64,000 nt of DNA from Mobula hypostoma (Eukaryota): assembly GCF_963921235.1 (NCBI RefSeq), contig NC_086119.1:35836001-35900000 (forward strand). Reading direction: 5' to 3'. The position numbers and the translations under genes were made by a program. The notes beneath the pieces are model-generated. The model worked only from the letters and a program-made list of their open reading frames with translations, made no database searches and had not been told where the DNA came from. Shown piece after piece: positions 10,187-62,589 of the stretch (the first letter of the stretch is position 1; each line of letters opens with the position of its first letter).

Positions 10187-10271
10187 TTCATTTATTTCAC
10201 TGTACATTTATTTGGTTTGAAGAACTTTGTTTTATTTCTTCCTATGAGGGAACCTGCAGAATGGACTTTAA

Positions 10272-19495: not shown

Positions 19496-19504
19496 ACACG
19501 ATCA

Positions 19505-25339: not shown

Positions 25340-25431
25340 AACCTTCCTAGTTCTTGCAACTTGCACCAACTTCTACATCAATCTTTTCCCTATTTAATCC
25401 AACACAAAATGCACCCAGATCAAGCACATAC

Positions 25432-25569
25432 CTCTGCAGTACCAGTCTGAGAACCAAAGAAAATCTTCACACCAGCAACATGGATTTCTTTTTCTTCGTG
25501 GACTAAATGTCCATTTTGAATCAATTCTTTAGGTACATTTGCAGTTAAGACTTCTTTTACTACTTCTTC
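25432..25569 (-). CDS. TYW1: TYW1 exon 3 (EEVVKE...VAGVKIFFGSQTGTAE), start of flavodoxin-like domain
   Basis: Flavodoxin FMN-binding loop IFFGSQTGTA; donor GAG|gtatgt. The tandem acceptor GAGCAGCAG allows a start at 25572 or 25569. Confidence 0.95.
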
Positions 25570-26429
25570 CTGCTGCTCAAAAAAAGTGTCAAAAAATAAG
25601 CTAGTTGCATATAAATACCACAACTCTACACAATATAAAGCAGTCCACTTCTCAGGAAAAATTTGCAGGTAATTAATATAGACAGGATCTTTTGTTTTTA
25701 AAACAGATAAAAGCAACAATTAAAGAGTTGACACCATATTGTTTCTAATTGTTGTTTAACATGCATTTTTTAAAGTGGCTTGACTTTAAGACAAATATAT
25801 ATGTGCTAAAGATTTATTAGTTTAACAATTAAAAAGCTTAAAAGTTGCAATTCTATTTTCATCCTTCAAGCAACAAATATGGTTTTCATATACAGTGGAT
25901 TATAATTAATTGATCCATCAGTTAATCAGGACTGCCGCTTATTTGGGACAACTCAAAGAACAAAAACTCATGGAGAAAATAACTGGGATTCCCTTTGTTT
26001 ATTTGGGACACTGTGCAGCTTAATAGGGACAGAAACTGTTACCAAACAGTTTCTAACAGACGTTTGTTGCATGAACTCGTGTGGCCATTAGGCACTATAC
26101 CATGCTTAGAGCAAACAAGTTTTTTTAAAACAGTGTCATTTGTGTGCATTTATGTTCAAAATGAGGTGATTTTTGTCACTGATGATTGGCGGAAAATTAA
26201 CAGTAAGACAATTAGAAACATTTGCTCACTGCAGTTCAAGCATTCAGGCTTGGAGATAACACGAAAAATTTGAAGGCATCGACAATCATCTTGAATGTTA
26301 CAATGAAAATGAAAATTTAGAAGATGCAATTGTCAAAAGCATTGTATGAAGGCAGTCCATTATGTGCACAAGGTGTCCGTGATAATTATGTTCATTTACA
26401 ATCAAAAGAACATGGCAGCATGTTGGCTG

Positions 26430-37303: not shown

Positions 37304-37444
<141 letters not shown>

Positions 37445-38594
37445 TGAGTATCCTGTCCATGCAGTTTGTTACATCTGTTAATGTAATATATCTCCATTTG
37501 TTTGTGTTTGTATGTAATTTGGTATTGTCGTGCACTGTTTTTTGAGATAGTATGTATTTATAATAAAGGGGGCTTCTGTTCGTTAAATATCCGAAGGTAG
37601 TATAGAGCTTTCTAAGTGGTGACTTCCGTCTCAAAGTTCATCGTGAGTCACGATACTCACTTAAACCTTGATGCTATTCCCACAGATCAGCTGAACATCG
37701 AACATAACTTCCTAACCTCTCATTGTCTGATATCTGAATTTGGGTGCCGACCCCTCCCATTCAATTTTGTCATCCTTGCAGCTCTCCTCTCACACGAAGA
37801 GTGTGTCCATTCTTAGTTATTTGTGTCTCCTGATCCCGTTGACCAAGAGCTAAAAAAAAAATTAGGACTCATTGAAGAATGAACATAAGGACTAGATCAC
37901 ATGCTTAGAACTTTTTTGAGATATTTTATCTCACATATATACCCTACTATTTACGTTAATATTTTATCTAAGAATATATGTATTAATATATTATTGTGCT
38001 TAATCTCACGACAAATAGATTATAATTCTGGAAATAAATAAAACTATAGGGGCTTTTTCCAAAAAGGTCAAATATCTAGGATGACACGGCCAGTGACTGG
38101 TGTGATTGCTAATAAAAAAAAAGTTTTGTTCTGATATAATTACATTAAAACTAACACAGTTTATATTTCAGTTTACCACTTCAGAGTTTTACATGACATC
38201 ATTGAATATCATAGAAATTAAACATATAATTATGGAACTGTAGATGGGGTTGCTAAGATCACGCAATATAATGAAAAGAATTTTCACTCTTTTACAAAAA
38301 TAACATTAGTAAGAAAAGATTAGTCTCTGTGACAATGCAATATCGACCAAATGAGAATTTTAAGTCAGTTTTTGTTTACTAAAAGTTTGATTCCAATTGG
38401 ATCACATCCAGTGAAAGCATCTGGTTTTCATTCTGGGTCCTAGGAAGCAAGAGAGAATGCAGTGATACAGACTTTTAGATAACAATCTACTGGATAGGTC
38501 AGTGAAGTATGGGTTTTTAAAGAAAGATTTGTGTGGATTTGTTCTGTATGTTTTTATGAACAGCTCTTTATCTCAACCAATTTTGTATTTTCAG

Positions 38595-38724
38595 GGAAAA
38601 GGATCTCGATGAAGTTCTTCAGACACACACAGTGTTTACAAATGTGTCCAAAGGACAAGTGGCAAAAAAAGAGGATTGTGTTGCAGCATTTCAGACAGAT
38701 AATATGACGGACATATGTAAACAG
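38595..38724 (+). CDS. SBDS: SBDS exon 2 ([27 protein letters not shown]...ICKQ)
   Basis: tttcag|G ... CAG|gtgtgt; 130 nt. Confidence 0.98.
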
Positions 38725-39083
38725 GTGTGTTTTGACAAAACTTGCAGAAGGAATAAGTTGCATTGAAAGCTATTGCCTGATTGAAAATCGTTATTTTATA
38801 AGTTTGCTTTAATGTCATAGTGACAGATTGATATATTTTGGAAGTGTATTCCAATAATTTAAATAAATATTGTATCTGGGTTGCCCAGACTCCACCTGTC
38901 CCTGAAGTGCTTCTAACCAACAGTTTAAAATATATAATAAATTGTTATCGTGAGAAACTCTGATGAGAATCAATAGAATCAATATTAATCTCTCCAAATA
39001 ACTTACGATTGTGTCATTATAATAATTACTCTTTAATACTTCGAATTCAATTTTAAACACAAATAAATATCTTTACCTTTCAG

Positions 39084-39284
39084 ATTTTGGCAAAGGGTGA
39101 ATTGCAGGTATCTGACAAGGAGCGGCACGCGCAGCTTGAACAGATGTTTCGAGACATAGCAACCATAGTAACAGAGAAATGTGTCAACCCCGAAACGAAG
39201 AGACCTTACACCGTGAACCTAATAGAGCGTGCCATGAAGGACATTCACTACTCTGTGAAGGCCAACAAGAGTACCAAGCAGCAG
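39084..39284 (+). CDS. SBDS: SBDS exon 3 ([14 protein letters not shown]...[10 protein letters not shown]...KSTKQQ)
   Basis: tttcag|ATT ... CAG|gtagac; 201 nt. Confidence 0.99.
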
Positions 39285-39683
39285 GTAGACTAGCACAAAG
39301 CCCTAAATGGTGCAGTTTTTACTGGATATACTGGGGTCTTTAAGTCAGAGTGCATGTTCTGATGTTCACAGTTACAAGAACAAGACTTCCAAATGATTGT
39401 TCTGTTGACAAAACAATTTCATCTGTGTTGAGAACACCAGATGTGACAATAAGACCTTTATTTTACCCAATTATACAGGTTTCTTTATGTTTTGTAATTT
39501 TTGTTTAAGCTTGCAATATTTACTTTCTACGTTGGCTGGTTCAGCTTTTGAAGTAAGATGAGAGTAGCGATGTATTTTGGGTTTTTTGTTGTTAATTCAT
39601 TTTTTTGTGCAGATCCAAGCATCGAGCTATCCAGCTTCTCAACAAAACTCACTCAGGTGTAAAGCCTTAACTGTCCCTGCACA

Positions 39684-40204
39684 CTCAGCCACACTCAGGT
39701 TGGAGGAACAACACCTTATATTCCGTCTGGGTAGCCTCCAACCTGATGGCATGAACATCGACTTCTCTAACTTCCGCTAAGGCCCCACCTCCCCCTCGTA
39801 CCCCATCTGTTACTTATTTTATGCACACATTCTTTCTCTCACTCTCCTTTTTCTCCCTCTGTCCCTCTGAATGTACCTCTTGCCCATCCTCTGGGTCCCC
39901 CCCCCTTGTCTTTCTTCCCGGACCTCCTGTCCCATGATCCTGTCGTATCCCTTTTGCCTATCACCTGTCCAGCTTTTGGCTCCATCCCTCCCCCTCCTGT
40001 CTTCTCCTATCATTTTGGATCTCCCCCTCCCCCTCCAGCTTTCAAATCTCTTACTCACTCTTCCTTCAGTTAGTCCTGACGAAGGGTCTCAGCCTGAAAC
40101 GTCGACTGCACCTCTTCCTAGAGATGCTGCCTGGCCTGCTGCGTTCACCAGCAACTTTGATGTGTGATGCTTGAATTTCCAGCATCTGCAGAATTCCTGT
40201 TGTT
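39684..40204 (+). mobile_element. Penelope-like element, young 5'-truncated copy in SBDS intron 3
   Basis: ATLRLEEQHLIFRLGSLQPDGMNIDFSNFR*; near-identical to the copy at 9480-10186; exact 12-bp TSD TGTCCCTGCACA at 39672-39683 and 40205-40216. Confidence 0.93.
40072..40107 (+). ncRNA. Minimal type-I hammerhead ribozyme motif in Penelope terminus
   Basis: AGUC-CUGACGA-AGGGUCUCAGCCU-GAAAC-GUC-GACU; predicted cleavage after C40103. Confidence 0.8.
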
Positions 40205-40299
40205 TGTCCCTGCACAATTTCAACAGGTTACTTAAAAACTACTGCGACTTCGTTTTCAGTAACTTGTTGATTCAGAAGTCTGGAGAAAGCAGCGCCTGA

Positions 40300-42900
40300 C
40301 CAGATTTCTAGGTTGATGTGTACTTGATTTCAAAATCATAGGCTAATACATTATGGCCCATTTTTGTAGATGGTTAACTGTATCCACCGAGATTACTTTT
40401 CTTACACCCAAACATGGACAACAGTGGTTTGTGATCAGTAAGGAAAGTGAAGCATCTTGTGGAATTTCTTCACAGCAAGGATGATTCCCAAGGCTTCCTT
40501 CTCGAGTTGTCCATATTTCCTTCCTGCTGAGGTCAGTGATCTTGCTGCAGGCACGTCAGTTTTTTTCAGAACCATCAAGGAATATATGGGATTAGACAGC
40601 TCCCACCCCATAGTTGAATGCATCCTTCTTGACTACGGTTGACAATTCTCAGTTTTCTTATGTGACAATGTTTTTTTTTCTTTCTACTTTATATGCGCGT
40701 ATATGTTTCTGCACTTTGGCCCCAGAGGAACCCTGTCTCGTTCAATTGTACCCATGTACAGTTTGAATAACAATTAAACTTGAATTGATCTAATTTGATT
40801 TAAAATGTGTCAAAAGAAGGTTACATGACACAATATTCTTCACCTTATCAAAAGCTTCTTGGACTAGCTCCACATGGCACCCTTGTTGAACAGGGCATTG
40901 AGTACTGCAGGAAGAAATACTGAATAATGACTGATCATGCCTAAAATTGATCGTAAAGTGCTGACATTCTGATGGTGGAGGCATCTTTAAGATAGTAGTA
41001 ATGTTTTTGGGAGCAGGGCAGTGACAGAATCCCAGATACTTGATTGAAGACAGCAGGAGGCTGCATTTTTCTGCCCAAAATCTTGTAGCTTGTTCAAAAC
41101 GTGGTCCAGACATTGGCATAGTTCTGTCTGATCTGTGCCCATCACATTATCAAGGTAAGTGGAACACCGTCAATACCCACTCAGCATGGTGTCCGTAAGC
41201 TGTTAGAAAATTGAAGGAGCCGCTGTACATCGAAAGGCAGAGAGGGGAATAAGCCAACACCTTGTGTGTTGTAATGGTGAGAAGCTCCTGTGTATTTTCT
41301 GCCAATTCAACCTGGAGGTAGGGTTCAGCAAGTCCAGCTTCACAAGGTATTGACCATCATTCAATTTAGCAAAGAGATCTGCTGGTACCAGTAATGACTG
41401 CTGGTGTGTCTACATAGCCACTTTTGAGACCAGCTGAGAAGTCTGCACACAGCCTCAGTGTACCGTTGGCTTTCTTGCTAATGACTATTGGAGCTGCACA
41501 CATCAGTAGTTGCCATCTTTAATCACTCCAGCTTGTTGTAGGCAATCTAGCTCTTGCTGAACGATTGGTAAGGCTGCGTATGGTACCGGTCTTTTGGAAC
41601 GGAAGACTAGCTTTGTGTCTGAACAAAGATGGAATTCTGCTTGCAGTTTGGTCCATCGACCTATACCTTCTTCAAACACTGCTGCATAGCGCTATTATAG
41701 TTGTTGTATGGTCTCGTGTACTGATGGTGGTATGGCGTCAAATGACATGATTTGAACAACCAATATCTTCATACAGACCTCATCCAGAGGGATGCTCCAG
41801 AGATCAAGCTTGTCCATCCAGTCAATGCCAAGGACATTCAGGTCTGGCTGGTCTGTTGGGTAACACACACTGTTGATTTGGTTACCATTCAGCTCCACCA
41901 TGCAGTTTAGCTCATCAATCAGCTGGAGGGTTCCACACAATGCACTGCAGAACGTGATGAGTTGATTAGACTGGTAGGGACCGAAGTGCCCACTACTTGC
42001 TTTTGGAGATGATACAGTGTCAAACACCACCACTGAGTTGAAGCTTAACCAATTGATTTTTGATAAATACATTGATGTACCATCTCCTGGGGGTGAAGTT
42101 TACTTTGAACATGACCATTAAACTTCTTGTACATCTTGATGGCTTTTATAACTTCTTGTGCTGTGTTTCACTAGCCGGGAAGACAGTGAAGGACGGCAAA
42201 ATTCTTTGTTACTATGGTGTTGGCATTTGCTGCAAATGTGTTTCTTGTATTGACAGGTTTTTTTGCATTATGCCATGCAGCACAGTTCCAACAAGCTGTG
42301 TTTGGCTATTTGGAGACCTACTGAGTGATGATGTCTGGGCCATTGGAAACTGCATTGACATGGTTCTGTTTGACCAGTATGGAATTCTGTTTCAAGTTGA
42401 CATTCTTTAGTGACAGCTTGTATAGTAATATCAGGGTCTTGATCCAGTCTAGCCAGTAGCCGTTTGTGAATGTCTGCTTTGCCAAGTGCCTGAAATCTGC
42501 AAATAAAAATCAGATATTTGAACTGTGATTCAGTCATGTTACCCATCTTGAACTTTTCACATTCGCGATTGATGATACCAGCATATGTGATGAAGTCATC
42601 TGCATCGTGTTTAACATCTTTTAGGCAAGGGTAGCAAACACCGAAGAGAGATGACTACTCTCCAAAAAAGCTTGCTGGCTGTTGGACAGTTTCATCAAAT
42701 GGTAGGTCACACGGGATCTGAGGCAGGATGAAGTTGAAATAACATTCATATTCAACAGTACCCAATTTTCAGAGGAAAGTATGTGTCTTCCACGAGTCAT
42801 CTTTACTGGCAAACTTGACCTGGAATATATCTTCGTAATGTTTGAACCATGATCATTGCTACTTCTAAGCTGTGTCGGTGCATGGCCATTTAGTAACTGA
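40300..42900 (-). mobile_element. Decayed Ty3/Gypsy LTR retrotransposon internal region
   Basis: RNase H motif YGQLEKEALGIILAVKKFHKML, RT end SIKYLGF, protease end NVLGIDWMDKL, gag-like remnants; heavily frameshifted; LTRs not identified. Confidence 0.8.
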
Positions 42901-45240
42901 AATGCTCCCAAGCACATAGCCTTTGTTGCTGCACAGCTGGTATTTTCTTTTACATAATTTTAATATAATTGTGAAATATCCTGTAATTATATGTTAATGA
43001 ATATTATCCATAAATTTTCTAAATAATAAATGTACCACAACCTTCACTTTGAAACATTTTAGAGCTTCAGTGTTTGTATTTACATTGCTGGTGTTTCAAG
43101 TTACAACACTGTTACAAATTGTAACAATAAACATGGAATGGAAATCAGTAGTCATTGTAAATAAACTGCCAGCCTTCGGAAAGCTGCCAACACAGTCCAG
43201 TCAATACTCGTAGTATGCATATTACAAAACAAAATGCCAGTTTTCAAGCTGTAAATTTTTTTTTCTCAGAGCAATGGTTGGTCCACACAGCTGTAAAAAC
43301 AAATGGAGGAAACTGATCCTGATTTAAACATAACTCACAAAGTGGCATCAAACTGGAAGTTGGTAATGGACGCAACAACTGACTCATATGAGTTCTTTTC
43401 GGTGTTTAACACCAATGTTGTTGGACTCAATAATAACCTGCTGGTCAAGGTTTTGATTAACTTCAGCTGGGCAGTCCAGAATTGAGCTTGCTGCTATTGT
43501 AGAATTGCTCTCAAGTCTTCTGAGAAAATTGTTTTGTTGTTATAATACAGCAGCTTGTCACCAATTTGTTGTTTGTTTGCCCAATAATTACTGATGAGAC
43601 CCAAAGCCAGGAGATAGAATAAAGCCAGAACTCGAAATAAACCTTTATTCAGTCAAACCACTCAACTACAAAAATCTCAAAACTCAACAATACGTCCCGA
43701 AGCAGGACTAATTAAATACTTTACTCAAGAAGACTCAAGATGTTGATAGGAATGACGATCAATCAGTGAAAGTCAGCCTGGGATTGGTTGTCAGCTGACC
43801 AGTAGGCATTGGTTGTTTTGGCTTGCTGTAACAGATATCAGGAGATGCAGTGTCTGATCTGCTCTTGCAACCACGTTATTTGTATAGCTGGTCCAATTAT
43901 TTACAATGAATGGTGACTGTCAGGATGCTGATGGTGGAGGTTTCAGTGATGTTCATCCCATCAAGTAATGGGTGAGGGATTAGACTCTCTCATTACACTT
44001 GGTCGTTGCATGGTATTTTTGTGGCACACATTACTTGCCATGTATCTGCTTATATCTGTACAGGTACAGGTGTGAACTGTCAGTTGCTGTAAATTTGTAG
44101 TTAAACATGGTGTAAACATCAGCTGACTTACTCACTTCTGACCTTTATGACGGATGGGAAGAACATTGAAGCAGCTGAAGGTGGTTGGGCCTAGAACACT
44201 GTCTAAGAAACTCCTGCAATGATACCTGGGGTTGAGATGACTGACTTCCAAAATTCACAACCATTTTCCTTTGTGCAAAATGTTACTCCAGCCATCAGTG
44301 TTAAAAATCCTTGAATCTTAAGTTTATATTTGTGCTCTTTAAAACAAAGGAATTAAAGCTGTCCTGCAGTATTATTCTTGAAATTGGCATGTTGACAGGG
44401 ATGATATTTATGTATCACCACCAGTTGTCTAGATGATAGTGGTACAAATGAATGGAGGTTGACAGCTCAACCTTCTACTTCTGCTGCTCGGAAGTGCTGG
44501 ACAGTCAGTGAAGATACTGCATTTGTTTTGAACAAGTATGGGAGAATATCCCTGAACCCTTTCCTCTGTCCACCTGGTGTCCTCTTCCCAAAAGTGATTT
44601 TGAAATTTGATGTTTTTTTTCAGGAGTTTGGTAACTGGTTCAGTGGTAGAGAGAGAACTTTTAGAGATGCTGGCTTTCAGTTTAGAAGTTTGACCCGAGG
44701 CACCATTTGGACTGCTGAGATGCACACATAAAGCAATCATGGTGTTACTGGAAAGAGTTCAACAAAGTAGATTTTTTAAACCAAGTGTGTGTGTATGTAT
44801 GTATATATATGTTACCATATATAACTCTGAGGTTCATTTTCTTGTGGGCATACACAGCAACTACAATTTTTCCCAGTGAATGTAATGCTCAACCAATTAT
44901 GACTGTACATTCATCTTACTTTCATCTAAAATTTATCTGTTATATTTGACTATATTTCAGAAGTAATCTATGCAAAAGAAACATTATTTGAAAAAATAAA
45001 TTTGTAAAGGAATTAATGCATTATTGCAGGTAAGGTTCCACTGGACACAAGTCAGAAACAGGTTTTTGGATTAATATTTGAGTATCAGTAGTGTAATGTT
45101 AATGCTGTAGAAACAAATCCAGATTAAATTACATTACAGTGCTGATGTTTAAATGTGCGTATGTAAATTCTACTTGCTTAAATGTTCCAGTGTACAGAAC
45201 CAAAGTAACTAACTTTTAATTTATCTTTTCATATGTAAAG

Positions 45241-45405
45241 GCATTGGAAGTTATCAGACTGCTCAAGGATAGTATGCAGATTGAACGTGCTCACATGAGA
45301 CTCCGACTCAGGATTCCAATAAAGGATGGAAAGCGGCTTAAGGAAAAACTGAAGCCACTGATTAAAATGATGGAAAGCGAAGAATTTGCTGAAGATTTAG
45401 ATGTT
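45241..45405 (+). CDS. SBDS: SBDS exon 4 ([22 protein letters not shown]...EDLDV)
   Basis: gtaaag|GCA ... GTT|gtaagt; 165 nt. Confidence 0.98.
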
Positions 45406-45671
45406 GTAAGTTTTTTTTTACATTCCTGGTATATTGGAGTATCATAATCAATGCTATTGGTTTGAAGATTTCAGATTTGGATTAGTTTACTTTCATGTTC
45501 ACTAGGGTGCAATGTGATTTCTTGGCTTGTATTAAAATCATAGTTTAATCGCTCAAAACATATTTAATCTCTCAATTTTTTTTCTAGTTTGATAAAAATT
45601 GTTTATCTGCATATCCAGTGAAACCATGTTAATTCATTGGACCTAAACATTAATAAATGGAATTTATTTTT

Positions 45672-46290
45672 TTAGATTATGAAGACCCGTAGTCCTCTTT
45701 TATTGTCATTTAGTAATGCATGCATTAAGAAATGATGCATTATTTCCTCCGGTGTGATATCATAAAACACAGGACAAACCAAGACTAAAAAAACTGACAA
45801 AACCACATAATTATAACATATGGTATTGTTGCACTGTTGTAACTATAACTTGATGAAGAAGTCCGTGAGCACAGTAAAGTTCAAAGTTTCTCAAATGTCC
45901 CACATTTCACGCAGACAGGAGAAGGAAGAAAACCTCTCCCTGCCATGCTGACCACAATCCAACTCTGAGTCATGGGAAAACTTCGAGCTCTGATCAGCTG
46001 ACACTGAGTACTGAGCGCCATCTCTGTCCGAGCGATTCGACCTCTTTCTCGGTCGCCAACAGTGGGCAAGGCCGGGGATTTTGAGGCCTACCCTCCGAAA
46101 GATTCCCGACCGCGCAGTAACGACAGCAGTGAACGAGCGTTTCAGAAATTTTTCCAGATGTTACTGTGCTTTCACATTCATTCTCCATCAAATCAGAATT
46201 GTCCACACCCCCTATTTAACAGATACGACATCATTTTTCACTGGAGAGCTGCTAACGCGCAGCGCGCTGCCATCTTCTCCTCCCGCCTTT
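45672..46290 (-). mobile_element. Non-autonomous LINE-derived element, copy 1
   Basis: Minus strand starts GGAGGAGAAGATGGCAGCG and ends ...AATGACAATAAAAG; homologous to 57595-58256. Confidence 0.7.
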
Positions 46291-47127
46291 ATCAAAGATG
46301 TTAAGATATTTCAATGCAATAAATTTGTAATGAGTCAGAGTTCTACAAAATACAAATGGACCCTTTGTCCCACAACGTCTGCACTGATCCTCATGCCTAC
46401 CAATACTAATTCCACTTGCCTGCATTAATTCCATATCCCTCCTCCTCATTCTCGTACTTGTAGAAATCCTCTTAAAGTGCTTTACTGTTCCTGCATACAC
46501 CACCATTTATGGCAGCTCAATTTGTATTCTGGCTACTTTTTATGTGACAGTAACATCCTTATAATTTTTTTCTCTAGCTTAATCATGTGAGATATTAGCT
46601 GATTTGATTGCATAAAACACCAGTTGTTGATTATTTAAGAAATACTGACTCCAGGAAATAAAACAATACTAAGTTCAGCAGGGTTAAAAAATGTTATAAT
46701 TCTGTTAATATTTCCTATGTGGAATTAACATGTCTTAACTGAGGTGGAAAACAGGTGTTGGCCTACTCTGGGATGCTGCAGACATCAGACTGAGTACTAG
46801 TCATTGTAGGTAACTATTGACTTTTACCGAGAAATGTTGTTGGCTGGATACCAACTGATGTTTGGCTAACCTGTGCTTTATCATCCTCTTTGGTCTACTA
46901 AAATTCACACATGCATACCCACTGCATAGCTGCAGGGTTGAAATATAAAGGGAATTAAGCTACACACTTGTTGATGGAAGGGATAGAAAGATTTGAGATC
47001 TGAAATTTCTTTGAATGTTAGATTACACAGCCAGCAGCTGCAGAAATTTTCTGATGGTCCAAATGGCCATTTGATTTTTTTTCGCTTTGGTAATTAAATA
47101 GAAATCATCTTTATGATTTTACTTCAG

Positions 47128-47256
47128 GTATGTTTGATTGATCCTGGTTGCTTCAGAGAAATTGATGAACTAATCCGACAGGAAACAAAGGGAAAGGCTT
47201 CCCTGGAAGTTCTCAGCTTAAAGGAGGTGGAAGAAGGTGATGAAAAACTTGAATAA
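47128..47256 (+). CDS. SBDS: SBDS exon 5 ([42 protein letters not shown])
   Basis: cttcag|GTA ... TAA; 129 nt. Total CDS 753 nt = 250 aa. Confidence 0.99.
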
Positions 47257-51871: not shown

Positions 51872-51928
51872 TCAGAGTTCTTCCAAAAAGGCCACTTGTG
51901 TCTTTGCAGTTACACTCTGTAAATTAAG
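51872..51928 (-). CDS. NF2: NF2-like terminal coding exon (LNLQSVTAKTQVAFLEEL*)
   Basis: caacag|CTT ... TGA; 57 nt; resembles the merlin isoform-1 tail LTLQSAKSRVAFFEEL. Confidence 0.9.
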   Translation of the reverse strand, partial: LNLQSVTAKTQVAFLEEL

Positions 51929-52129
51929 CTGTTGAATTAAAGCAAAAAACACATTAATAAATTGTTGAGAGAATATCTTTCAAATTTTTTCACGAACAAG
52001 TTTCCAAATAATATCCAAGTCTTATCCCTGTATTGTATTACTGTGTGGCAAGGTAACTTTCCTATGGAAAATACATGTGGCTACCAACAAAAAGGAGGGT
52101 TACATTAGTTGGAATGGTTTTAAATGCCA

Positions 52130-55100
52130 AGTTCATTCATTCAAGGATCAACTTTATTCGCCATATACTTTTACATTAACAGTGAATTACGGTAAACTGG
52201 AACACACTGGGCCCCAATACATTTTGGTCCAAATAAACAGCTGCCCTAATTAGCCAAAGTTTCATGGAAATAGTTGAGGTTTAAAAAAAAACTGTTCAAC
52301 TGAGTAACAAGTTGTGTATTTAAATGAAGTACAGATCAAGTTACATTATCAATACTACTACAGTACTATAAAACTGTATTAGCTCCTAATAGTTATCGAT
52401 TGAGGAATTCATCCAGAGTATGCTGCCATGTTCTTTTGATTGATTGTAAATGAACAAAATCAGCAGACACCTAGTGCAGAAAATGAACTAACTTCATACA
52501 ATGCTTTTGACAATTGCATGCTCCGAATCTTCATTTTCATTGAAACATTCAAAATGATTGTTGATACCTTCAAATCTTTGTAGTTCCTAACTTGAAACAG
52601 TGAAATCATTTCATTTTCACTTCTAGGTATTTCTGGCATGTCCAAGTCAGAATGCTTGAAACCACGGTGAACAAAACAATTCTAAATTGTCTTACTGCTC
52701 ATTTCTTGCCAACTATAAGTGACAAAGGTTACTGTTTTTTGAACCCAAAACGTCAGCATGACATATGCTGGTGATATTAAACCCAATCCTGATTCTGCAA
52801 CTGATGCTATTCAAAAACTGTTCACTGTAAGCACGGCAGAGTGTCAAACAGCCATACAAATGCACGCAACTGACGCTAGTCAGAAACTGTTCAGCAACAG
52901 TATCCAATCCCAATTAAGTGGTATGGTGCCCCAAATAAATGAAGAGAATGCTGGCTATTTTCTTTATTTTTGTTCTTTAAGAGTTGTCCCAAAGAAGCTG
53001 CTGCCTCTATTAACTGTGCAATTAACCAGAATCCACTGTATTCGGAATTGGTTGTGGTTTGTTGGCACTACTTGCAACATAAAACAACAACATGCAACTT
53101 TAGGGAATAAAAATAAAATTAGAAGCACTGATACCGAATAAATATGCATAAACGCACAAATATCAGAATTATTTAGTACAAGGTAAATTGTACTATAAAA
53201 AGTGCTCTAAAGTATTTTCAGTGCAGTGTACTAACTGAGGTAGTAGATAGAAGGGGTTGGGGGGTAGAGCTAACGAGAGTGGTCAATCAGATTAATTGCC
53301 TGGGTGAAGAAACTTTTAAAATCAAATTAGGTTTTTGTTTTATAGCCCTATATAGCACTTGCCAGAAGGGAACTTGTGGGTGAAGGAATTTGTGGGGTGG
53401 ATAGTGTGCCCAGAATGATTTTTCCTGCCTGCTTTCTTGTCTTGGACACATACAAGTCCTGCAGTGATGGTACACCGCAACTAATGACCTTTTCTGCTGT
53501 CCTGACAGTTTGCCGTAGTTTTCGCATATTGTGAGAGGATACAGCACCTTTATCAGACAGTAAGGGCTGATGTGAGGATATCCTCTACAATGGCAATGAA
53601 GAATTGCATGAGCATGTTCTGTGGAAGATGGAATTTTACCAACTGCCACAAGTAGTACATCCTCTTCCTAACATTTTTGTTAATGGAGCAGATACGGTTC
53701 TCCCACGAGGTCCTGTGAAATAATGAAGATCAGAAACCTGAATGTTGAAACTGTGCTAACTGTAGAGTTATTAATGATGAGTGGGTGGAACAGAAGTACA
53801 TTTCTCCTGAAGTCAATATATATCGCGATCGTTTTGAGGGCAATCAGCTCCAAGTTGTTGTGATTACAGCAGGACACTAAGCTTGTTTCCTTCCTTGTGG
53901 TACTTGGAGTTGTCGCGTCTGACAATTAGTTCAATGACAGTGGTGTCATCCACAAGCTATCAGATTAACTGATGGGTTCACTGGAGACACAGTCACTGGT
54001 GTATAAAGAAAATGGGAAGACACTCCTGTGGCGCATATCCCCACATCCTGACTGAGCAGGATATGGAGATGTGTAGCCTAGTCTCACATACTGCCTCCTG
54101 TCAGAGCAGAATTTGTTATCCACTGCAGATGGAACCTGGTATGTTAACTTTGGAGAATTTCTCTTGTAGAAGCTCAAGGATAATGGTATTGAAGGCTGAA
54201 CTGAAATCACGGGAGTATCAAGCCCAGACGAATGTTAACTGCATTACTCACAGATCTGTTGGCTCTGTAAGGCGAACTTCAGTGGATCTAAAAAAAAATT
54301 AGAGTTATAGATTTGAGAAATTATATGACTGGCCTTTCAAATGTCTTCATTGTGACTGATGTGAGTGCAACTGGCCTGTAGTCATTCAGTACAGTGATCA
54401 TTGAATTTTTTGGGGGGACTGGAGTAATAACATTTTTTGAAACATGCTAAACAGTTTAAGAGACTGATTGAAAATGATTCTGAAGACTTCGGACAGCTGG
54501 TTAGCACCATGTTTAAGAACTGCAGGGGAGATAGAGTCGGGGCTAGCAGCCTTGATATTTTGCTTCCTAAACAGCATTGTCACCTCCTCTTCCTTCACAA
54601 CAAAGGTGTCTGTCACTAGTGATGGTCTGCTGAATGGACACTAGAAGGGATCTTTGAAGTGTGATCTAGCTGCAGTGGAACGCGTTTAAATGATTAAGGA
54701 GGGGATGCCTTATTTTATCATTTGGAATGGATGGAAAGCTTCTCCAGACTAAAGAACAGTACTTTACAGATAACTGGTTCTCCAGATTGACTGAATATTG
54801 GCACTTGGCAGCTGTGATTGCCTTCTCCAGCTCTTACTTGGCCTTTTTGAAATCCCTGTTATCTCCACTCCTGTAAACCTCCTCCTTCTCCAGATGCAGC
54901 TGTCTAAGCTGTGTGTTGAACCAGGGTTTATTATTTCTAATGTTGGTGATTGTTTTAGTGCAGATGCAGGCATCTTCAATCGGCGGATCGGAACATTTTT
55001 AAAAATAGATGCAAGGTAGTTTCTTAGCAGCAGTGGTTTTATCATACCTTTTTTTTTAGAACTTTCAAATGTCTCAGATCCTCTTGCACACATGTAATTG

Positions 55101-55170
55101 AAAGCCAACATGCAAGTGCAACGAGCCATCCCAAAGGCAAAATGGTTATGATGGCTTCAGTTGAGGAGGT
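52130..55170 (-). mobile_element. Decayed Rex1/Babar LINE in the last NF2-like intron
   Basis: KAASPDSISPAVLKHGANQLSEVF..IFNQSL, FSLYTSDC, DDTT and NNLEL remnants; tail at ~52130-52160. Confidence 0.8.
52180..53038. mobile_element. Tigger/pogo-like MITE inserted in the Rex1 3' UTR
   Basis: Ends CAGTGAATTACGGTAAACTGG / CAATTAACCAGAATCCACTG-TA; reverse-orientation relative of 25893-27951. Confidence 0.75.
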
Positions 55171-55682
55171 TTTGAGAACACAAGTAACTATGCCTTTCTG
55201 CAATTATATGGGAACTCGGTGAGAATATTAGAGGAAAGATGCATGGATAGAGGAATAGTTGACAGGCAGGAAGTAGTGAGTGGAAATAAAGGTAACTTTG
55301 TTTGGTTGTCTGCCAGTGACTAGTGGTGTTCTCGGTGAGAAGGGTTAGGAGTCTTAATCTCCTAACCTTTGTTCAGAAAGTACATTGGAAATTCATTAGA
55401 CACGTTCCAGGTAGAGCAGATTTGTTATTATCGACAGTTTAAGGAGACCAGGGTAGAATTTTCTGGGCTTTATAAAACTGAACAATCCTCAGTGAAATGT
55501 AAAAAATTATTAGTGTTTGATCAGCTGGATGAAAGGCAGATATTTCCCCTTGCTGAGAAGTCTAGAATCATAGTTTGCAGTCTTAGAATAAGAGACAAGT
55601 CATTTAGGATTGAAACGAGGAATGAAATACAAGTGTGGCAAACCTTTGGCATTCTCAACTTCAATTTGTTTCAAATAGATAA

Positions 55683-58430
55683 AAGACCATAAGACCAAAA
55701 GACATAGGAGCAGAATTAAGCCATTCAGTCCATCAAGTCCGCTCCGCCATTTCATCATGGCTGATCCCAGATCCCATGCAACCCCATAGACCTCTCACCA
55801 TATCCCTTGATGTCCCAACCAATCAGGAATCTATCAACTTCTGCTTTAAATATACCCACAGACTTGGCCTCCACTGCAGTCTGTGGCACAGCATTCCACA
55901 GACTCATCACTCTTTGGGCTAAGATAATTCCTCCCTACTTCTGTTCTAAAAAGTCGCCCCTCAATTTTGAGACTGTGCCCTCTAGCTTTGGATACCCCCA
56001 GAGGAAACATCCTCTCCACATCCACCTCCTCTAGTCCTTTCAACATTTGGTAGGTTTCAATGAGATCCCCATGCATTCTTCTAAATTCCAGTGTGTACAG
56101 GCCCAAAGCTGCCAGACGCTCCCCATATGTTAACCCCTTCATTACTGCGATCACCCTCATGAACCTCCTCTGCATTCTCTCCAATGACAATGCATCCTTT
56201 CAGAGGTAAGTGGCCTAAATCTGTTGACAATACTCCCAGTGCAGCCCGACTATTGTCTTATAGTGCTGAAGGCTTTACCTCCTTGTTTTTAATATTTTAT
56301 TCCCTTTCAAATAAATGCCAACATTGAATTTGCCTTCTTTACCACAGACTCAACCTGTGAATTAACCTTCCGGGAGCCTTGCTCAAGACTCTCAATTCCC
56401 TTTGCACCTCTGATATTTGAACTTTCTCCCCACTTAGATAATACACTATGGATCCCTTTACCAAAATACATTATCATACATTTCCCAACACTGTATTCCA
56501 TCTGCCACCTTTTTGCTCATTCTTCCAATTTGTCCAAGTCCTGCTGCAATTACGTTGCTTCCTCAGCACTACCTACCCCTCCACATGTTTTCATATCATC
56601 CACAAACTTTGCCACAAAGCCATCAATTCCATTATCTAAATCACTGACAAATAATGTGAAAAGTAGCAGTCCCAAAACTGACCCCTGAAGAACACCACTA
56701 GTCACTGGCAGACAACCAAAGTTACCTTTATTTCCTTTACTTCCTGCCTGTCAGCTATTCCTCTATCCATGCATCTTTCCGCTAACACCATAGGATTTTA
56801 TCTTGTAAGCAGCCTCATGTGAGATACCTTATCAAATGCCTTCTGAAAATCTAAATAAATGACATCCACTGCCTCTCCATTGGCCACCATGCCTGATACT
56901 TCCTCAAAGAATTCTAACGGATTTGTCCGACAAGATTTCCCTTTACAGAAACCACGTTGACTTTGACTTATTTTATTATTAGCCTCCAAGTACCCCGAAA
57001 CTTCATCCTTAATAATGGACTCCAACACCTTCCTAACCAAATAACTGGCCCATAATTTACTCTTTTGTCTTTGTCCTTTCTTAAAGAGTGGAGTGACATT
57101 TGCAATTATCCAGCAAGTGATCCTTGAAAGATCATGACCAATGCATCCGTCACCTCTTCAGCAACCCCCTTCAGGACTCTAGGATGTAGTCCATCTAGTC
57201 CAGATGACTTATCCACCTCAAGAACTTTCAGTTTGCCTAGCACGTGTTCCTTTGTAATAGCAATAATAAAGCCAGCTCATCTGTCATTTCTTTGTCTCCC
57301 ATTGCTAACTCACCAGCATCATTTTCCAGTGGTCCAACATTAACTCTCACCTCCCTTTTATTCTTTATATAACTGAAAAAAACTTTTAGTATCCAGCTTT
57401 ATATTATCGACTAGTTTACCTTCATATTTCACCTTTGCCCTCCTTATAGCGCTAGTTGCCCTTTGTTGGATTTTAAAAGCTTGCCAATCATCCAACTTCC
57501 TACTCACTTTCACCACTTTATATGCCCTTTCCTTAGCTTTTATGCAGTAGCCACAGTTGCCTAGCCCTGCCATTTCTTCTGTGGGACACATATCAGTTCA
57601 GTTCGGTTTCAGTTTCCGTTTATTGTCATTTAGAAATGCATGCATTAAAAAATGATACAACGTTCTTCCAGAATGATCTCACAAGAAAACACAGGACAAA
57701 CCAAGACTAAACTGACAAAACCACAGAATTATAACATATAGTTACAACAGTGCAAAGCAATACCATAATTTGATAAAGAGCAGACCATGGGCACAGTAAA
57801 AAAAAGTCTCAAAGTCCCGATAGACTCATCATCCCACACAGGCAGCAGAAGGGAGGAACTCTCCCCTCCATGAACTTCCAAGTGCCAACTCGCCGATGCA
57901 GCATCATTGGCACCCGACCGCAGCGGACTCAAGTCTGTCCAAAAACTTCGAGCCTCCGACTAGCCCCTCCGACACAGCCTCTCCAAGCACCATCCTCTGC
58001 CGAACGCTTTGACTCCGCCCCGGCCGCTGAGCAACAAGCAAAGCCGAGGACTCAGGGCCTTCTCCTCCAGAGATTCTGGACCACACAGTAGCAGCAGCAG
58101 CAGCGAAGCAGGCATTTCAGAAGTTTCACCAGATGTTCCTCTGTGCTCTCACGTCCATCTCCATCAAATCAGGATTGTGCACAGCACCCTACTTGACAAA
58201 TAACAGACATCACCACCGGAGTGGCCGCTGCGAGCTGCGTCGCGCCGCCATCTTCACCATCATCCCACGCCTTGTGAACTATCCTCAGAAACTTCAGCCA
58301 CCTCTGTTCTGCTGTCATCCCCACCAGTATCTCCCTCCAACCACCTGGGCAAGCTCCTCTCATGACTCTGTAACTCCCTTTATTCCATTGCAATACTGAT
58401 ACATGTGATTTATCCTTCTCTCTCCAGATA
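55683..58430 (-). mobile_element. CR1 LINE ORF2 fragment
   Basis: SQRGFCKGKSC..AVDVIYLDFQKAFDKVSH, LERMQRRF, LGLYTLEFRRMHGDLIE; (TCTTATGG)n-like tail. Confidence 0.9.
57595..58256 (-). mobile_element. Non-autonomous LINE-derived element, copy 2, nested in CR1
   Basis: Starts GAAGATGGCGGCGCG, ends AATGACAATAAAC plus (GAACT)n; CpG-retaining; homologous to 45672-46290. Confidence 0.72.
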
Positions 58431-60310
58431 TTAATAGATTTCAGGTATTAAGGATTAAAATGGATATACAGACAGTGCAGGAAAATGACATTGTGGAGAT
58501 TGAGTAACATGCAGCCCAAAGCATTAAATAGTCCCACTCGTGTTCTTGATCCTTGTGTTTTATGTTCAATGTCCCCAAACACTCACCAATGAATTAATTA
58601 TTCTTTCTGGTGGTCATTATCATTTTCTTTTCAGGCAACCTCAAGTCAACTAGTGTTCGTAACAAAAAAATGAGTTGCTAGAGGAACGCAGTGGCTCAGC
58701 AATAACCAAGGTAGCAAAAGGATAGTCCTCCATAGAAACTGCATGACCCACTGGGTTCCTCAGGAGCTTGTATTTTGCTCAATATCCCAGCACAGTTCCA
58801 AATATACCAATACGAGAAGTAGCACTTTCTTAATCATTGATTGTAGGCAAAATGTTGATCAGGCCAGGAAAGAAAATCCTTCCCAGTTTTGCTAACTGTA
58901 CCAGAATACATTGCAATTATCTGAATGGTCAGATGAGGTCTATTTAATGGGTCACCCTTAAGACAGCACCTTGGACAATGCAACATCTGCTTAGAATGTC
59001 CTTAAGGTGTTAACTAGTCCTGGATTGACACTGGAGGCCTCAACCTTCTGACTGAAAGACACAGGAACTGGTACACAGCCATGTGGTCACCAGAACACAC
59101 TTCTGTTTTCAGCTTATAGTTGCCATCCATGATTTAACTCCATACTGCTTCACTCAGCTCATTTACTGTTCCAGGACATGGCCACGTTAAGGCTCTTCTG
59201 ACCAGGAGCCCATCTTCTATCTTTGATAAACTTAAACACATGCAAAATTCAACTCAAGTTCTTCATTAAAGTTGCAATCACCCATTACCATATGCTTCTG
59301 CAAGGTCCCCCAAGTATATCTTAAATTCTCCATTTTGTGTTCAATCCTTTCCATGGCCTCATCTTCCTCTATTACTAATCTAGAGCATCATAACTATATT
59401 AGGTATCTCCAGTTTAAGTGTGGGATTTTAGTAGAATACTAGTGGCCAAGGACCCAAGTTCTAGAACTTCCAAAATAACCCACTTCATTTTGTCAGCTCT
59501 ATTTCACCATTAAGACACAAAACATCTGCCTTAAGACCTCCTTATTTAATTCTATTTTATTAATAAAATTTTGTTTGATAGCACATTTCGTAGACTTTGG
59601 GCATCTTACGACATTAAAGAAACTACACAAGTATATGAATATTACAGAAACATGTACAGAACTATCATACAACAGTAACCTCCTCTTCCTTCACAACAAA
59701 GGTGTTGGGAGTAAAGACACATTTCTGTATTTTTCATTATTTTTGAACAGATTTGAATACAAACTATAAAATAATTCAGTTAAAATATGCTATAACAGGG
59801 CAATATCCTGAATGTATACATACATTAGATCCCATCTGGAATGAGATATAATTTGACATTCTGAAAACTATTTACTTCTTTGCAGTTATGATATCCCCAA
59901 TTTCAAGTCAGTGGGAGGCATCAGTAAATTAGGCTGAAGAGAGTTACATTTGAATAGTAATTGTTACAGGAATAGCTTTTTTTTTTATTTTTAAACACAG
60001 AGATATAAGGACACATACCAGGTAGGTGATAAAGTGCTACAAGAAATTTAAAACAGACAAAAGACTACCCAGATAATTATGTCAAGATGCAGAGAGATTG
60101 TTCTGTCCCAGTAAGGTGGACATGATAGATGATGTTCTTTAATTTCTTCACAAACTCAAATTGACAGAAAACAAGTTAATATACAAAACTACTTTTTGTT
60201 CTATCTTAATACTACTAGACTAATAAGCCAAAGAATCTTTACTGTTTTGCATTAAAGCAACATGCATTTAGAGGTAATACACAAGTACATATTCAAAAAA
60301 GAAAACTCAC

Positions 60311-60470
60311 ATTACTGAGTGGTGTGTAAGTATTATCAGAAAATTCCATGGTCTCACTGGTAGGGATGCCCATGTTAGCATGTCGTTCTTCTAATTTCAG
60401 AGCTTCAATTTCAGTTTTTAGTTCCTTCAACTGCTCTTGCAGGTGTTTGCTTTTTTCCATGTATTCCACA
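60311..60470 (-). CDS. NF2: NF2-like exon 15 equivalent ([29 protein letters not shown]...TPLSN)
   Basis: tcatag|T ... AAT|gtgagt; 160 nt; C-ERMAD motif. Confidence 0.96.
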
Positions 60471-60610
60471 CTATGAAGTAAATTAAAATTGTGCACGTTA
60501 TTTGCCTCTTCAAGGCGGCAAATATTATTAATTCTGAAGCTCATCTGATGCCACTGGCATGCAGTACATCCCCGGACGAACGCACAGGAGGTAGAAGTAC
60601 AGTAACTTAC

Positions 60611-60738
60611 CGTTCTCGCTCTATCTCCATGGATAGCCGCTTCATATCAGTATCCTTGAAGTCAAATTTAAAAGATCCAGATTCTAAGTTAAGATCACCA
60701 ACATCAGCAGGGGGATGAGCTGAATATGAAGCTATAAC
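60611..60738 (-). CDS. NF2: NF2-like exon 14 equivalent ([10 protein letters not shown]...[19 protein letters not shown])
   Basis: cttag|GTT ... CG|gtaagt; 128 nt; merlin signature [16 protein letters not shown] containing the Ser518 equivalent. Confidence 0.96.
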
Positions 60739-61063
60739 CTAAGTGAATCAGATTTAAAAGTTGAGACATCAGCTGTACTTCTTAAAGATCTTTTATCTAT
60801 TATGAATTCAGTATATTGCTAAACTAATTCAGTCAGCAAAATTAACTTCTGAGGTGCATTCACCATTTCATCACTAGACAAATTGCACATTATTCTGCAT
60901 TGTGCAAGTACATTCGTTCATAACAATGTAGAGAATCAATAATTCAGTACTAACCATATATGTGAAACATGAATGTCTTTTTTAAATGAATAAACTATGT
61001 TATTAAGTAAATTAAACATACATACACACAAAAAATACTTCCAAGTCATATTTTTGCATATAC

Positions 61064-61166
61064 CGGATAACTGGGTTTTGTAATCTCCAGCAGTCTATGC
61101 TTGGCTCTTCTCTCTGCCTCTCGAGCTTCAGTCAGATCTTGCTTGAGCTGTTCTGCTTCCTTAGAT
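61064..61166 (-). CDS. NF2: NF2-like exon 13 equivalent ([34 protein letters not shown])
   Basis: tttcag|A ... CCG|gtatat; 103 nt; phase fits the previous exon. Confidence 0.95.
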
Positions 61167-61635
61167 CTGAAATAAATATTTTTAAAGTAAAGATTGTATA
61201 ATAACACTATTCCATCACTACAAAACAATGCCAAGACATTCCTTCTGGAAATGATAAAACAACAGTGTGTTCCTAGTTTCAATGAGTCACTAAATCAACC
61301 ATCACTTAATTTTGCCCTATGATTACACGAGGAACCTTTAGACAATACCCATCAGAAAAAAAAACACCCATCACAAATGAAGGACCATTTAAGAGAATAT
61401 TATCTACTTGTGGAAGAGAGACAATGCCATTGCAATTATGTAGTAACCATGGCTCTCCTTTCTATTTTATGAAGTACTTGATAGTTTTCCAGCCACATTG
61501 ATTCAGGTTCACTTTCTGATTTCTAAATTCTGATCTCTTAAACTGGCCTGATCAACAGATAGGTTTGGGAAAGAATGCTGGCAAAAGAATGAATGAGAAA
61601 AGACTGACCGTTGTAGGATTTTCACATAATCATTA

Positions 61636-62240
61636 CTTAGAACGTAGAAATTCATAGCACATTACAGGCCCTTCAGCCCACAATGTTGTGCCAACCATGT
61701 AACCTACTCTAGAAACTGTCCGGAATTTCCCAACTGCATAGTCCTCTATTTTTCTAAGCTCCATGTACCTATCCAAGAGGCTCTTAAAATACCCTATTGT
61801 ATCTGCTTCCACCACCACCGCCGGCAGTGCATTCCATGCACCCACCACTCTCTGTGTGAAAAACTTACCCCTGACATCCCCTCAGTACCCATTTCCAAGC
61901 ACCTTAAAACTCTGCACCCTCATGTTAGCCACTTCAGCCTTGGAAAAAAGCCTCTGACTATCCACACGATCAATGCACCTCATCATCTTATACACCTCTA
62001 TCAGGTCACCTCTCATTCTCCATCACTCCAAGGAGAAAAGGTCAAGTGCACTCAACCTATTCTCAATAAGGTACTCCCTCCAATCCAGGCAACCTCCTTT
62101 TAAATCTCCTCCGCACTCCCTCTATGGTATGCACATCCTTCCCGTAGTGAAGTGACCAGAACTGAACACAGTGCTCCACATGAAGTATGACCAAGGTCTT
62201 ATATAGCTGTAACATTACCTCATGGCTCTTGAACTCAATT
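61636..62240 (-). mobile_element. CR1 LINE 3' fragment
   Basis: Same subfamily 3' end as 22700-23328 (VGAWNALPAVVVEADTIG). Confidence 0.88.
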
Positions 62241-62371
62241 ACACTTAATGTGAACTGATTTAACTACAGGTTTAGCAGTCACCCTCTGACGACACTGACT
62301 TCCACAAAATATACTGCATGTCATTTATCATATAGGCAAACAGATGTCTTCCAAAATGCAAGCTAACCAAC

Positions 62372-62589
62372 CTCCTCTCTGATTCCTCCACAAGCTTAAC
62401 AGCTATCAACTCTGCTTCTCGCATCTTCTGTTCCATTAGACGCTTTTCCTCTTTTGTCTTCAAGGCTGTGACTTCCAACCTTTGTCGCTCCTGCTCTGCT
62501 TCTGCAGCTTTCTGAGCGAGCAGCTTGGCCTCCTCTTCTGCAATCTGTGCCTTCTCAGCAAGCAAGTCAGCAGTCTCCTCTGATCGTAT
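62372..62589 (-). CDS. NF2: Merlin/NF2-like exon equivalent to human exon 12 ([34 protein letters not shown]...EESERR)
   Basis: Merlin coiled-coil sequence; cttag|ATA ... AG|gttggt; 218 nt. Probably a paralog rather than the strict ortholog (see findings). Confidence 0.95.

What the first reader, a model, noticed from the sequence alone, without database searches (positions are those of the whole stretch)
51872..62589. Merlin/NF2-like gene beside SBDS-TYW1: likely a second merlin (ohnolog) absent from mammals
Seen: five exons giving 221 C-terminal residues of a clear merlin with NF2-type exon phases, located next to SBDS and TYW1. Known: human NF2 lies between NIPSNAP1 and CABP7 on chr22, while SBDS/TYW1-family genes lie on 7q11 near CALN1, the CABP7 paralog, with no NF2 gene there. 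Inference: this is the whole-genome-duplication sister of NF2, kept in cartilaginous fish. The exon-14 start and exon-15 end ([24 protein letters not shown]) are strongly diverged, while the coiled coil is conserved.
Basis: partly seen in the sequence, partly recalled or inferred. Interest (0 to 1): 0.72.

Follow-up and report, generated by a model that had tools for sequence, protein, structure and literature searches.

The report
Ray nf2b gene, known NF2 paralogue
This is the 3' end of nf2b, an expressed second merlin gene of a ray that arose by an ancient duplication of the NF2 tumour-suppressor gene; it is real but was published in 2019 and is already annotated in this species.

Summary
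Five minus-strand exons (62372-62589, 61064-61166, 60611-60738, 60311-60470, 51872-51928) splice to 221 residues plus a stop. These residues are identical to residues 378-598 of the RefSeq protein 'NF2, moesin-ezrin-radixin like (MERLIN) tumor suppressor b' (nf2b) of Mobula hypostoma / Hypanus sabinus. Spliced transcript contigs from the window's own species confirm three of the four introns with no mismatch.

SBDS (+) lies 4.6 kb downstream, tail to tail, and TYW1 (-) lies beyond it.

Trees built from full-length proteins and from the window's 221 residues alone both put the gene in the nf2b clade (100/100 and 100/99). That clade is separate from the NF2/nf2a clade. Each clade holds chimaera, sharks, ray-finned and lobe-finned vertebrates, so the duplication predates jawed vertebrates.

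Flanking genes are paralogous. NIPSNAP sits beside nf2a in chimaera. NIPSNAP-MRPS17-nf2b is the order in pigeon, and MRPS17-nf2b-SBDS-TYW1 in chimaera.

However, Shabardina et al. 2019 already described this paralogue as 'merlin1' and reported it lost only in most Eutheria. The gene is annotated in at least 14 elasmobranchs.

One side lead remains untested: no nf2a protein from any batoid or galeomorph shark appeared in the searches.

The parts
62372..62589 (-). nf2b coding exon equivalent to human NF2 exon 12 (218 nt; coiled-coil part of the alpha-helical domain)
   Evidence: AG acceptor and GT donor read directly. Pfam ERM_helical 2.3e-11. 100% tblastn match to P0270 378-450. Transcript joint 61166>62372.
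61064..61166 (-). nf2b exon equivalent to NF2 exon 13 (103 nt)
   Evidence: Splice sites read. Transcript joints 60738>61064 and 61166>62372 with 0 mismatches.
60611..60738 (-). nf2b exon equivalent to NF2 exon 14 (128 nt). It has a diverged start and then the conserved motif KRLSMEIE, which holds the counterpart of human Ser518.
   Evidence: transcript joints; alignment. The Ser518 assignment comes from published knowledge of human merlin.
60311..60470 (-). nf2b exon equivalent to NF2 exon 15 (160 nt). Its start is conserved and its tail is nf2b-specific, ending in YTPLSN.
   Evidence: Pfam ERM_C 2.5e-7. Transcript joint 60470>60611. The tail matches the motif PPYxPHSN that PMC6978628 gives for bony-fish merlin1.
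51929..60310 (-). Last intron (8.4 kb), filled with reverse-transcriptase-like repeat fragments. No alternative terminal exon was recognised in it.
   Evidence: ORF lists. tblastn and motif scans with the alternative tails of other species found nothing convincing.
51872..51928 (-). Last coding exon (18 codons plus the TGA stop at 51872-51874), ending in AFLEEL. It corresponds to NF2 exon 17.
   Evidence: Acceptor CAACAG in phase 0. Identical to the C-terminus of P0270.
37316..47256 (+). SBDS, five coding exons at about 37316-37444, 38.6 kb, 39.1-39.3 kb, 45.2-45.4 kb and 47128-47256. It is convergent with nf2b, 4,615 nt from stop to stop.
   Evidence: Motif and ORF reading. Pfam SBDS_N, SBDS_domain_II and SBDS_C on four of the five exons. 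The same order and spacing occur in assembly GCA_963921235.1.
8407..25719 (-). 5' coding exons of TYW1 (flavodoxin domain and acidic linker), head to head with SBDS. Only the exons I located are spanned.
   Evidence: Motif hits at 25435-25461, 17240-17362 and 8440-8457. Pfam Flavodoxin_1 2.6e-7. The order SBDS-TYW1 is also seen in chimaera locus L003.

Best explanation
The stretch is the 3' third of nf2b, called 'merlin1' by Shabardina et al. 2019. nf2b is the vertebrate sister gene of the tumour suppressor NF2 (nf2a, 'merlin2'). The genome is that of a myliobatiform ray, most likely the assembly GCA_963921235.1.

The gene is intact, spliced and transcribed. It encodes a 598-residue protein with a FERM domain, a coiled coil and a C-terminal ERM-type domain.

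Shown here: the gene's identity, its exon structure, its expression, its place in the tree and its neighbours.

Inferred: the two genes arose together with their flanks in the whole-genome duplications at the base of vertebrates. One flank set is NIPSNAP1 with nf2a. The other is NIPSNAP2-MRPS17 with nf2b-SBDS-TYW1. nf2b was later lost in most placental mammals, where its former neighbours lie on either side of the human chromosome 7 centromere.

Also inferred: the protein works as merlins do. It would be a membrane-cortex scaffold whose C-terminal domain folds back on the FERM domain and is switched by phosphorylation of the conserved serine in KRLSMEIE, feeding into Hippo/LATS growth control. 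Zebrafish data support a growth-suppressing role: nf2b is the dominant embryonic paralogue, and its loss speeds nerve-sheath tumours.
For: The spliced 221 residues are identical to residues 378-598 of the RefSeq nf2b protein P0270.

Exact spliced transcript contigs exist in two runs of the same organism.

In the full-length tree the nf2b clade has 100/100 support and the nf2a clade 100/99, and each holds chimaera, sharks, actinopterygians and sarcopterygians. In the tree from the window's own residues the window sits in nf2b with 100/99 support. Identity of the window's residues is 95-98% to elasmobranch nf2b and 63-69% to any NF2/nf2a.

Synteny: nf2b-SBDS in both ray assemblies; NIPSNAP-MRPS17-nf2b in pigeon; NIPSNAP-nf2a in chimaera; MRPS17-nf2b-SBDS-TYW1 in chimaera.

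Literature: the merlin1/merlin2 paralogues, with chicken chr19/chr15 and zebrafish chr21/chr5 (PMC6978628); zebrafish nf2a on chr5 and nf2b on chr21, with nf2b loss cooperating with rp or tp53 mutations in MPNST (PMC3757083); nf2b as the dominant embryonic paralogue (PMC11646113).
Against: No lamprey or hagfish merlin was in the trees. The duplication is therefore dated only as 'before crown jawed vertebrates', not tied to a particular round of genome duplication.

The identities of the flanking NIPSNAP genes (1 versus 2) rest on human map knowledge and on the MRPS17 neighbour, not on a tree.

The function of the ray protein is extrapolated and nothing was assayed. Shabardina et al. argue that merlin1 lacks a tumour-suppressor stretch, which is in tension with the zebrafish genetics.
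Confidence: 0.93

Rival explanations
1. It is the ray's single NF2 orthologue, moved next to SBDS by a rearrangement.
For: No nf2a protein from any batoid appeared in the protein searches. The C-terminus AFLEEL and the exon sizes are NF2-like.
Against: The window's residues and the full protein sit in the nf2b clade with 100/99 and 100/100 support, apart from shark and chimaera nf2a. The SBDS/TYW1/MRPS17 neighbourhood is shared with chimaera nf2b, while chimaera nf2a sits beside NIPSNAP elsewhere.
Confidence: 0.02
2. It is a true old paralogue, but it came from a segmental or single-gene duplication before jawed vertebrates, not from whole-genome duplication.
For: Only one clear paralogous flank pair (NIPSNAP) was seen with the 10-kb flanks available. 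Shabardina et al. found weak synteny between the merlin1 and merlin2 regions.
Against: The flank pair is duplicated together with the gene. By established map knowledge the human 7p11-q11 and 22q12 regions share several paralogue pairs (NIPSNAP2/1, CALN1/CABP7, LIMK1/2, YWHAG/H). This was not tested here.
Confidence: 0.1
3. It is a decaying or silent relic copy.
For: None beyond the diverged tail of exon 15.
Against: The reading frame is open with canonical splice sites. The residues are 95-98% identical across sharks and rays. Spliced contigs of 1.76 and 2.04 kb with depth 144 and 50 occur in RNA-like runs.
Confidence: 0.01

Closest known systems
nf2b / 'merlin1' of non-eutherian vertebrates (Shabardina et al. 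2019; zebrafish nf2b on chr21; RefSeq nf2b of Mobula hypostoma and Hypanus sabinus)
   Same: It is the same gene. The sequence is identical over all 221 residues, the clade is the same, exon 15 carries the same signature tail (Y-x-P-x-S-N) and the MRPS17/SBDS/TYW1 neighbourhood is the same.
   Different: Nothing differs at the level of the gene. Elasmobranch and chimaera nf2b keep an NF2-like last exon (…AFLEEL) and evolve slowly, whereas tetrapod nf2b sits on a long branch. In the tetrapod nf2b proteins recovered here the C-terminus is carried by extra exons ending in …DVIYI.
NF2 / merlin (human 22q12; nf2a in fish)
   Same: The domain plan is the same and the exon borders fall at the same alignment positions. 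The 218-nt and 128-nt exons match my recollection of human exons 12 and 14, and chimaera nf2a exons map to the same borders. The coiled coil and the KRLSMEIE serine site are conserved, and the protein ends in AF[FL]EEL.
   Different: Identity over the C-terminal third is 63-69%. The start of exon 14 and the stretch matching human residues about 550-579 are diverged. It lies in a different chromosomal neighbourhood and a separate clade.
Ezrin / radixin / moesin
   Same: The FERM, ERM_helical and ERM_C Pfam domains are shared.
   Different: In the searches the gene groups with merlins, not ERMs, and its C-terminus is merlin-type. ERM proteins were not put in the trees.

Membership tests
Merlin subfamily of the ERM/FERM proteins | ERM alpha-helical domain followed by an ERM C-terminal domain | tested here: met
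   Pfam ERM_helical 2.3e-11 and ERM_C 2.5e-7 on window exons.
Merlin subfamily of the ERM/FERM proteins | N-terminal three-lobed FERM domain | tested here: met
   The FERM domain is not in the window because the gene runs off at 64000. The annotated protein P0270, identical over the window's 221 residues, carries FERM_N, FERM_M and FERM_C. A 2.04-kb transcript contig extends 1.4 kb upstream of exon 12.
Merlin subfamily of the ERM/FERM proteins | Groups with merlins of invertebrates and vertebrates; merlin-type C-terminus …AF[FL]EEL | tested here: met
   Invertebrate merlins form the outgroup to nf2a plus nf2b. The window ends in AFLEEL.
Merlin subfamily of the ERM/FERM proteins | Regulatory serine in the KRLS-MEIE motif (human Ser518) | tested here: met
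   The motif is present unchanged in exon 60611-60738. Its phosphorylation in the ray was not tested.
nf2b / merlin1 clade | Monophyly with nf2b of other vertebrates, separate from NF2/nf2a | tested here: met
   100/100 support with full-length proteins; 100/99 with the window's residues alone.
nf2b / merlin1 clade | Clade-specific tail of exon 15 (published motif PPYxPHSN…) in place of the NF2 stretch | tested here: met
   The window has …NTYTPLSN, aligned with AYPPLSN in sturgeon and PPYIPHSN in carp. The motif is from PMC6978628.
nf2b / merlin1 clade | Location in the MRPS17-SBDS-TYW1 neighbourhood | tested here: met
   Seen in the window, the ray assemblies, chimaera and pigeon, where MRPS17 and NIPSNAP are the flanks.
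NF2 / nf2a orthologue | Groups with mammalian NF2 | tested here: not met
   It is excluded by starred branches in both trees.
NF2 / nf2a orthologue | NIPSNAP1 / CABP7 neighbourhood | tested here: not met
   The 3' neighbour is SBDS. The 5' flank lies outside the window and was empty within 10 kb.
2R ohnologue pair | Both copies present before the split of cartilaginous and bony vertebrates, with duplicated flanking genes | tested here: inconclusive
   The timing is met and one duplicated flank (NIPSNAP) was seen. Chromosome-scale paralogy and cyclostome copies were not testable with these tools.

The most novel reading that the evidence does not exclude
In rays and galeomorph sharks nf2b may be the only merlin gene, with the true NF2 orthologue (nf2a) lost. 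That would be the mirror image of placental mammals, which kept NF2 and lost nf2b.

The evidence is indirect. Searches built to pull out nf2a-type proteins returned cartilaginous-fish hits only from Callorhinchus, Heptranchias and Pristiophorus. In contrast, at least 14 batoid and galeomorph species have nf2b in the same collection. Shabardina et al. also list 1-2 merlins for Chondrichthyes. An annotation or assembly gap is equally possible.
Probability: 0.3. Interest if true: 0.5.

Novelty: already known. Interest (0 to 1): 0.15.

Why it matters
As it stands this is an ordinary, correctly annotated gene. Its value is as a clean example of a tumour-suppressor paralogue that placental mammals lost.

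nf2b matters for reading fish and bird NF2 models, because zebrafish nf2b is the dominant paralogue and behaves as a tumour suppressor. Experiments or comparisons that treat 'NF2' as single-copy outside mammals are therefore misleading.

If rays really lack nf2a, they would be a natural test of whether nf2b alone can carry all merlin functions.

Tried and rejected
PDB sequence search with the exon-12 peptide gave no hit.

The representative search with one exon returned mostly single-exon fragments and no full-length NF2-type protein. NF2-type sequences came only from a search restricted to the C-terminal 71 residues.

I looked in the window for an alternative terminal exon of the kinds seen elsewhere: …EVIYI (chimaera, bichir, tetrapods), GW[TA]CLNSH… (catshark, houndshark) and the Leucoraja X2 tail. 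tblastn and motif scans found nothing credible. The one ORF ending …SLIY at 59921-59932 has no usable acceptor in frame, so I rejected it.

No RRPxCI-type exon 16 was found in the chimaera nf2a locus. The idea that the nf2b …IYI exon is homologous to NF2 exon 16 therefore stays a guess based on position only.

I tried to detect a second merlin in the ray by laying DNA contigs at 80% likeness. No second contig lay over the exons. The paralogue would probably be less than 80% alike in DNA, so this says nothing either way.

Earlier-findings look-ups for NF2 neighbours in this genome were blank. The supplementary tables of PMC6978628 are not held.
Full report
What is there.
On the minus strand the window holds five coding exons with canonical AG/GT borders: 62372-62589, 61064-61166, 60611-60738, 60311-60470 and 51872-51928. 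Joined, they give 666 nt, which is 221 codons and a TGA stop. Pfam recognises ERM_helical in the first exon and ERM_C in the fourth. No earlier exon lies between 62590 and 64000, so the gene runs off the window.

SBDS lies on the plus strand with five exons (37316-47256). Its stop is 4,615 nt from the merlin stop, tail to tail. 5' exons of TYW1 lie on the minus strand beyond it.

Identity.
A one-exon search of the representative library gave a sturgeon fragment and a 647-residue relative. A homologue search from the sturgeon fragment returned a large family. Its members are named 'NF2 … tumor suppressor b' or 'neurofibromin 2b' in fish and 'merlin-like' in birds and turtles.

The 90% cluster around the skate protein holds nf2b of at least 14 sharks and rays. 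One member, P0270, is RefSeq nf2b of Mobula hypostoma and Hypanus sabinus. It contains the window's 221 residues without a difference, at positions 378-598.

The stop-to-stop spacing to SBDS in the window (4,615 nt) equals that in assembly GCA_963921235.1 and differs from the 4,515 nt in GCA_030144855.1. The window probably comes from the former. This is an inference.

Expression.
Two RNA-like runs of the window's organism contain contigs of 1,757 and 2,042 nt. These lie on exactly the four upstream exons with no mismatch. They show the joints 60470>60611, 60738>64 (that is, 60738>61064) and 61166>62372, each bounded by GT..AG on the gene's strand. One contig extends 1.4 kb further upstream, which is enough for the FERM-coding part.

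Both contigs end exactly at the 3' end of exon 15 (60311). That is what an assembly graph does at a branch, so alternative downstream exons are likely, but I could not find them. The joint from exon 15 to the last exon lay outside the stretch laid and rests on the identity to P0270.

Orthologue or sister gene.
A search limited to the last 71 residues, and one from a sawshark protein, supplied NF2-type sequences. These include nf2a of Callorhinchus, Heptranchias and Pristiophorus.

- A maximum-likelihood tree of 35 full-length proteins, rooted on invertebrate merlins, gives two starred vertebrate clades. nf2b has 100/100 support and NF2/nf2a has 100/99.
- Each clade holds chimaera, sharks, ray-finned fishes and lobe-finned vertebrates. 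The ray protein is inside nf2b.
- A tree from only the columns covered by the window's 221 residues places the window row in nf2b with 100/99 support.
- Identity of the window's residues is 95-98% to elasmobranch nf2b and 89% to chimaera nf2b. It is 70-77% to ray-finned nf2b and 63-64% to bird and turtle nf2b.
- Against the other groups it is 63-69% to any NF2/nf2a and 43-54% to invertebrate merlins.

The duplication therefore predates crown jawed vertebrates.

Synteny.
- In both ray assemblies SBDS follows nf2b on the opposite strand.
- In chimaera the order is MRPS17, nf2b, SBDS, TYW1.
- In pigeon it is NIPSNAP, MRPS17, nf2b.
- Chimaera nf2a sits head to head with a NIPSNAP gene, as human NF2 does with NIPSNAP1 (the human order is from established map knowledge).

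The gene pair was therefore duplicated together with at least one flank. By map knowledge, which I did not test, human NIPSNAP2-MRPS17 (7p11.2) and SBDS-TYW1 (7q11.21) lie on either side of the chromosome 7 centromere. That is where the lost gene would have sat. This fits a whole-genome-duplication origin, but one flank pair and no cyclostome data do not prove it.

What is already known.
Shabardina et al. [quoted passage not shown] They call it merlin1 and place it on chicken chr19 and zebrafish chr21. NF2 is their merlin2, on chr15 and chr5.

They give the bony-fish C-terminal motif PPYxPHSNRNSAYM, note weak similarity to human residues 532-579, and note that Ser518 is kept. Their Table 1 counts two merlins in marsupials and platypus and 1-2 in Chondrichthyes, and armadillo keeps merlin1.

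Zebrafish nf2a is on chr5 and nf2b on chr21 (PMC3757083), so nf2b is merlin1. The window's exon 15 ends in …NTYTPLSN, the shark/ray form of that motif.

The finding is thus a correct rediscovery.

Likely mode of action (inferred).
The conserved coiled coil, the unchanged KRLSMEIE site and the AFLEEL end suggest the usual merlin mechanism. In that mechanism a FERM-tail contact is regulated by phosphorylation, and the protein acts as a cortical scaffold that restrains growth through the Hippo pathway.

Zebrafish nf2b is the dominant embryonic paralogue (PMC11646113). Its heterozygous loss accelerates nerve-sheath tumours (PMC3757083). This argues against the suggestion in PMC6978628 that merlin1 has no tumour-suppressing role. 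Nothing of this was assayed for the ray.

Side observations.
(a) No nf2a-type protein of any batoid or galeomorph shark appeared in two searches that ranked such proteins first. Loss and annotation gap are both open. Laying DNA contigs at 80% likeness could not decide.

(b) In chimaera an 11-codon alternative terminal exon ending …EIIYI lies between exon 15 and the AFLEEL exon, which is the position of human NF2 exon 16. Bichir, birds and turtles use …VIYI ends. In pigeon the long C-terminal 'insertion' is carried by extra exons downstream of exon 15.

(c) The tail of skate isoform X2 matches dispersed repeats in the window.

Verdict.
The gene is already known and annotated, so interest is low.

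Noticed in passing
protein searches: nf2a-type (true NF2) proteins of cartilaginous fish came only from Callorhinchus, Heptranchias and Pristiophorus. None came from batoids or galeomorph sharks, although at least 14 of those species have nf2b in the same collection.
   Followed up: partly
window 61627-62274: A piece of the intron between exons 12 and 13 is a very abundant repeat. Summed contig depth there is about 10^5-10^6 in DNA and RNA-like runs of two organisms, against about 15 in the flanks. It overlaps reverse-transcriptase-like ORFs.
   Followed up: no
window 60311 (3' end of exon 15): Both spliced transcript contigs (runs X9 and X10) stop exactly at this base. This suggests a branch in the assembly graph, meaning alternative 3' exons, but none could be located in the window.
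   Followed up: partly
window 2439-2483 (+) and 32228-32275 (-): The C-terminal tail of Leucoraja nf2b isoform X2 (…AKCWSNSAGQ…) matches dispersed copies here (AKCWRNSAGQ…). That terminal exon is probably transposon-derived or an annotation artefact.
   Followed up: no
L003:14356-14388 (Callorhinchus nf2b locus): An alternative terminal exon coding AGSHEAEIIYI plus a stop lies 433 nt after exon 15 and 2 kb before the AFLEEL exon, in the position of human NF2 exon 16. …VIYI ends also occur in bichir and in the bird and turtle nf2b proteins.
   Followed up: partly
L003:1-1742 and 10001-16442: In the chimaera assembly nf2b is annotated as two genes. The FERM half lies on the opposite strand upstream of MRPS17 and the C-terminal half downstream. 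This is either an inversion or a misassembly.
   Followed up: no
window 36776-36997: Seven evenly spaced tblastn hits (35-nt period) point to a tandem repeat in the short interval between the TYW1 and SBDS starts.
   Followed up: no
L004:969-9263 (tilapia nf2b locus): Tilapia nf2b is preceded by a claudin and a class I methyltransferase gene. From map knowledge this recalls the human 7q11.23 genes CLDN3/4 and METTL27.
   Followed up: no
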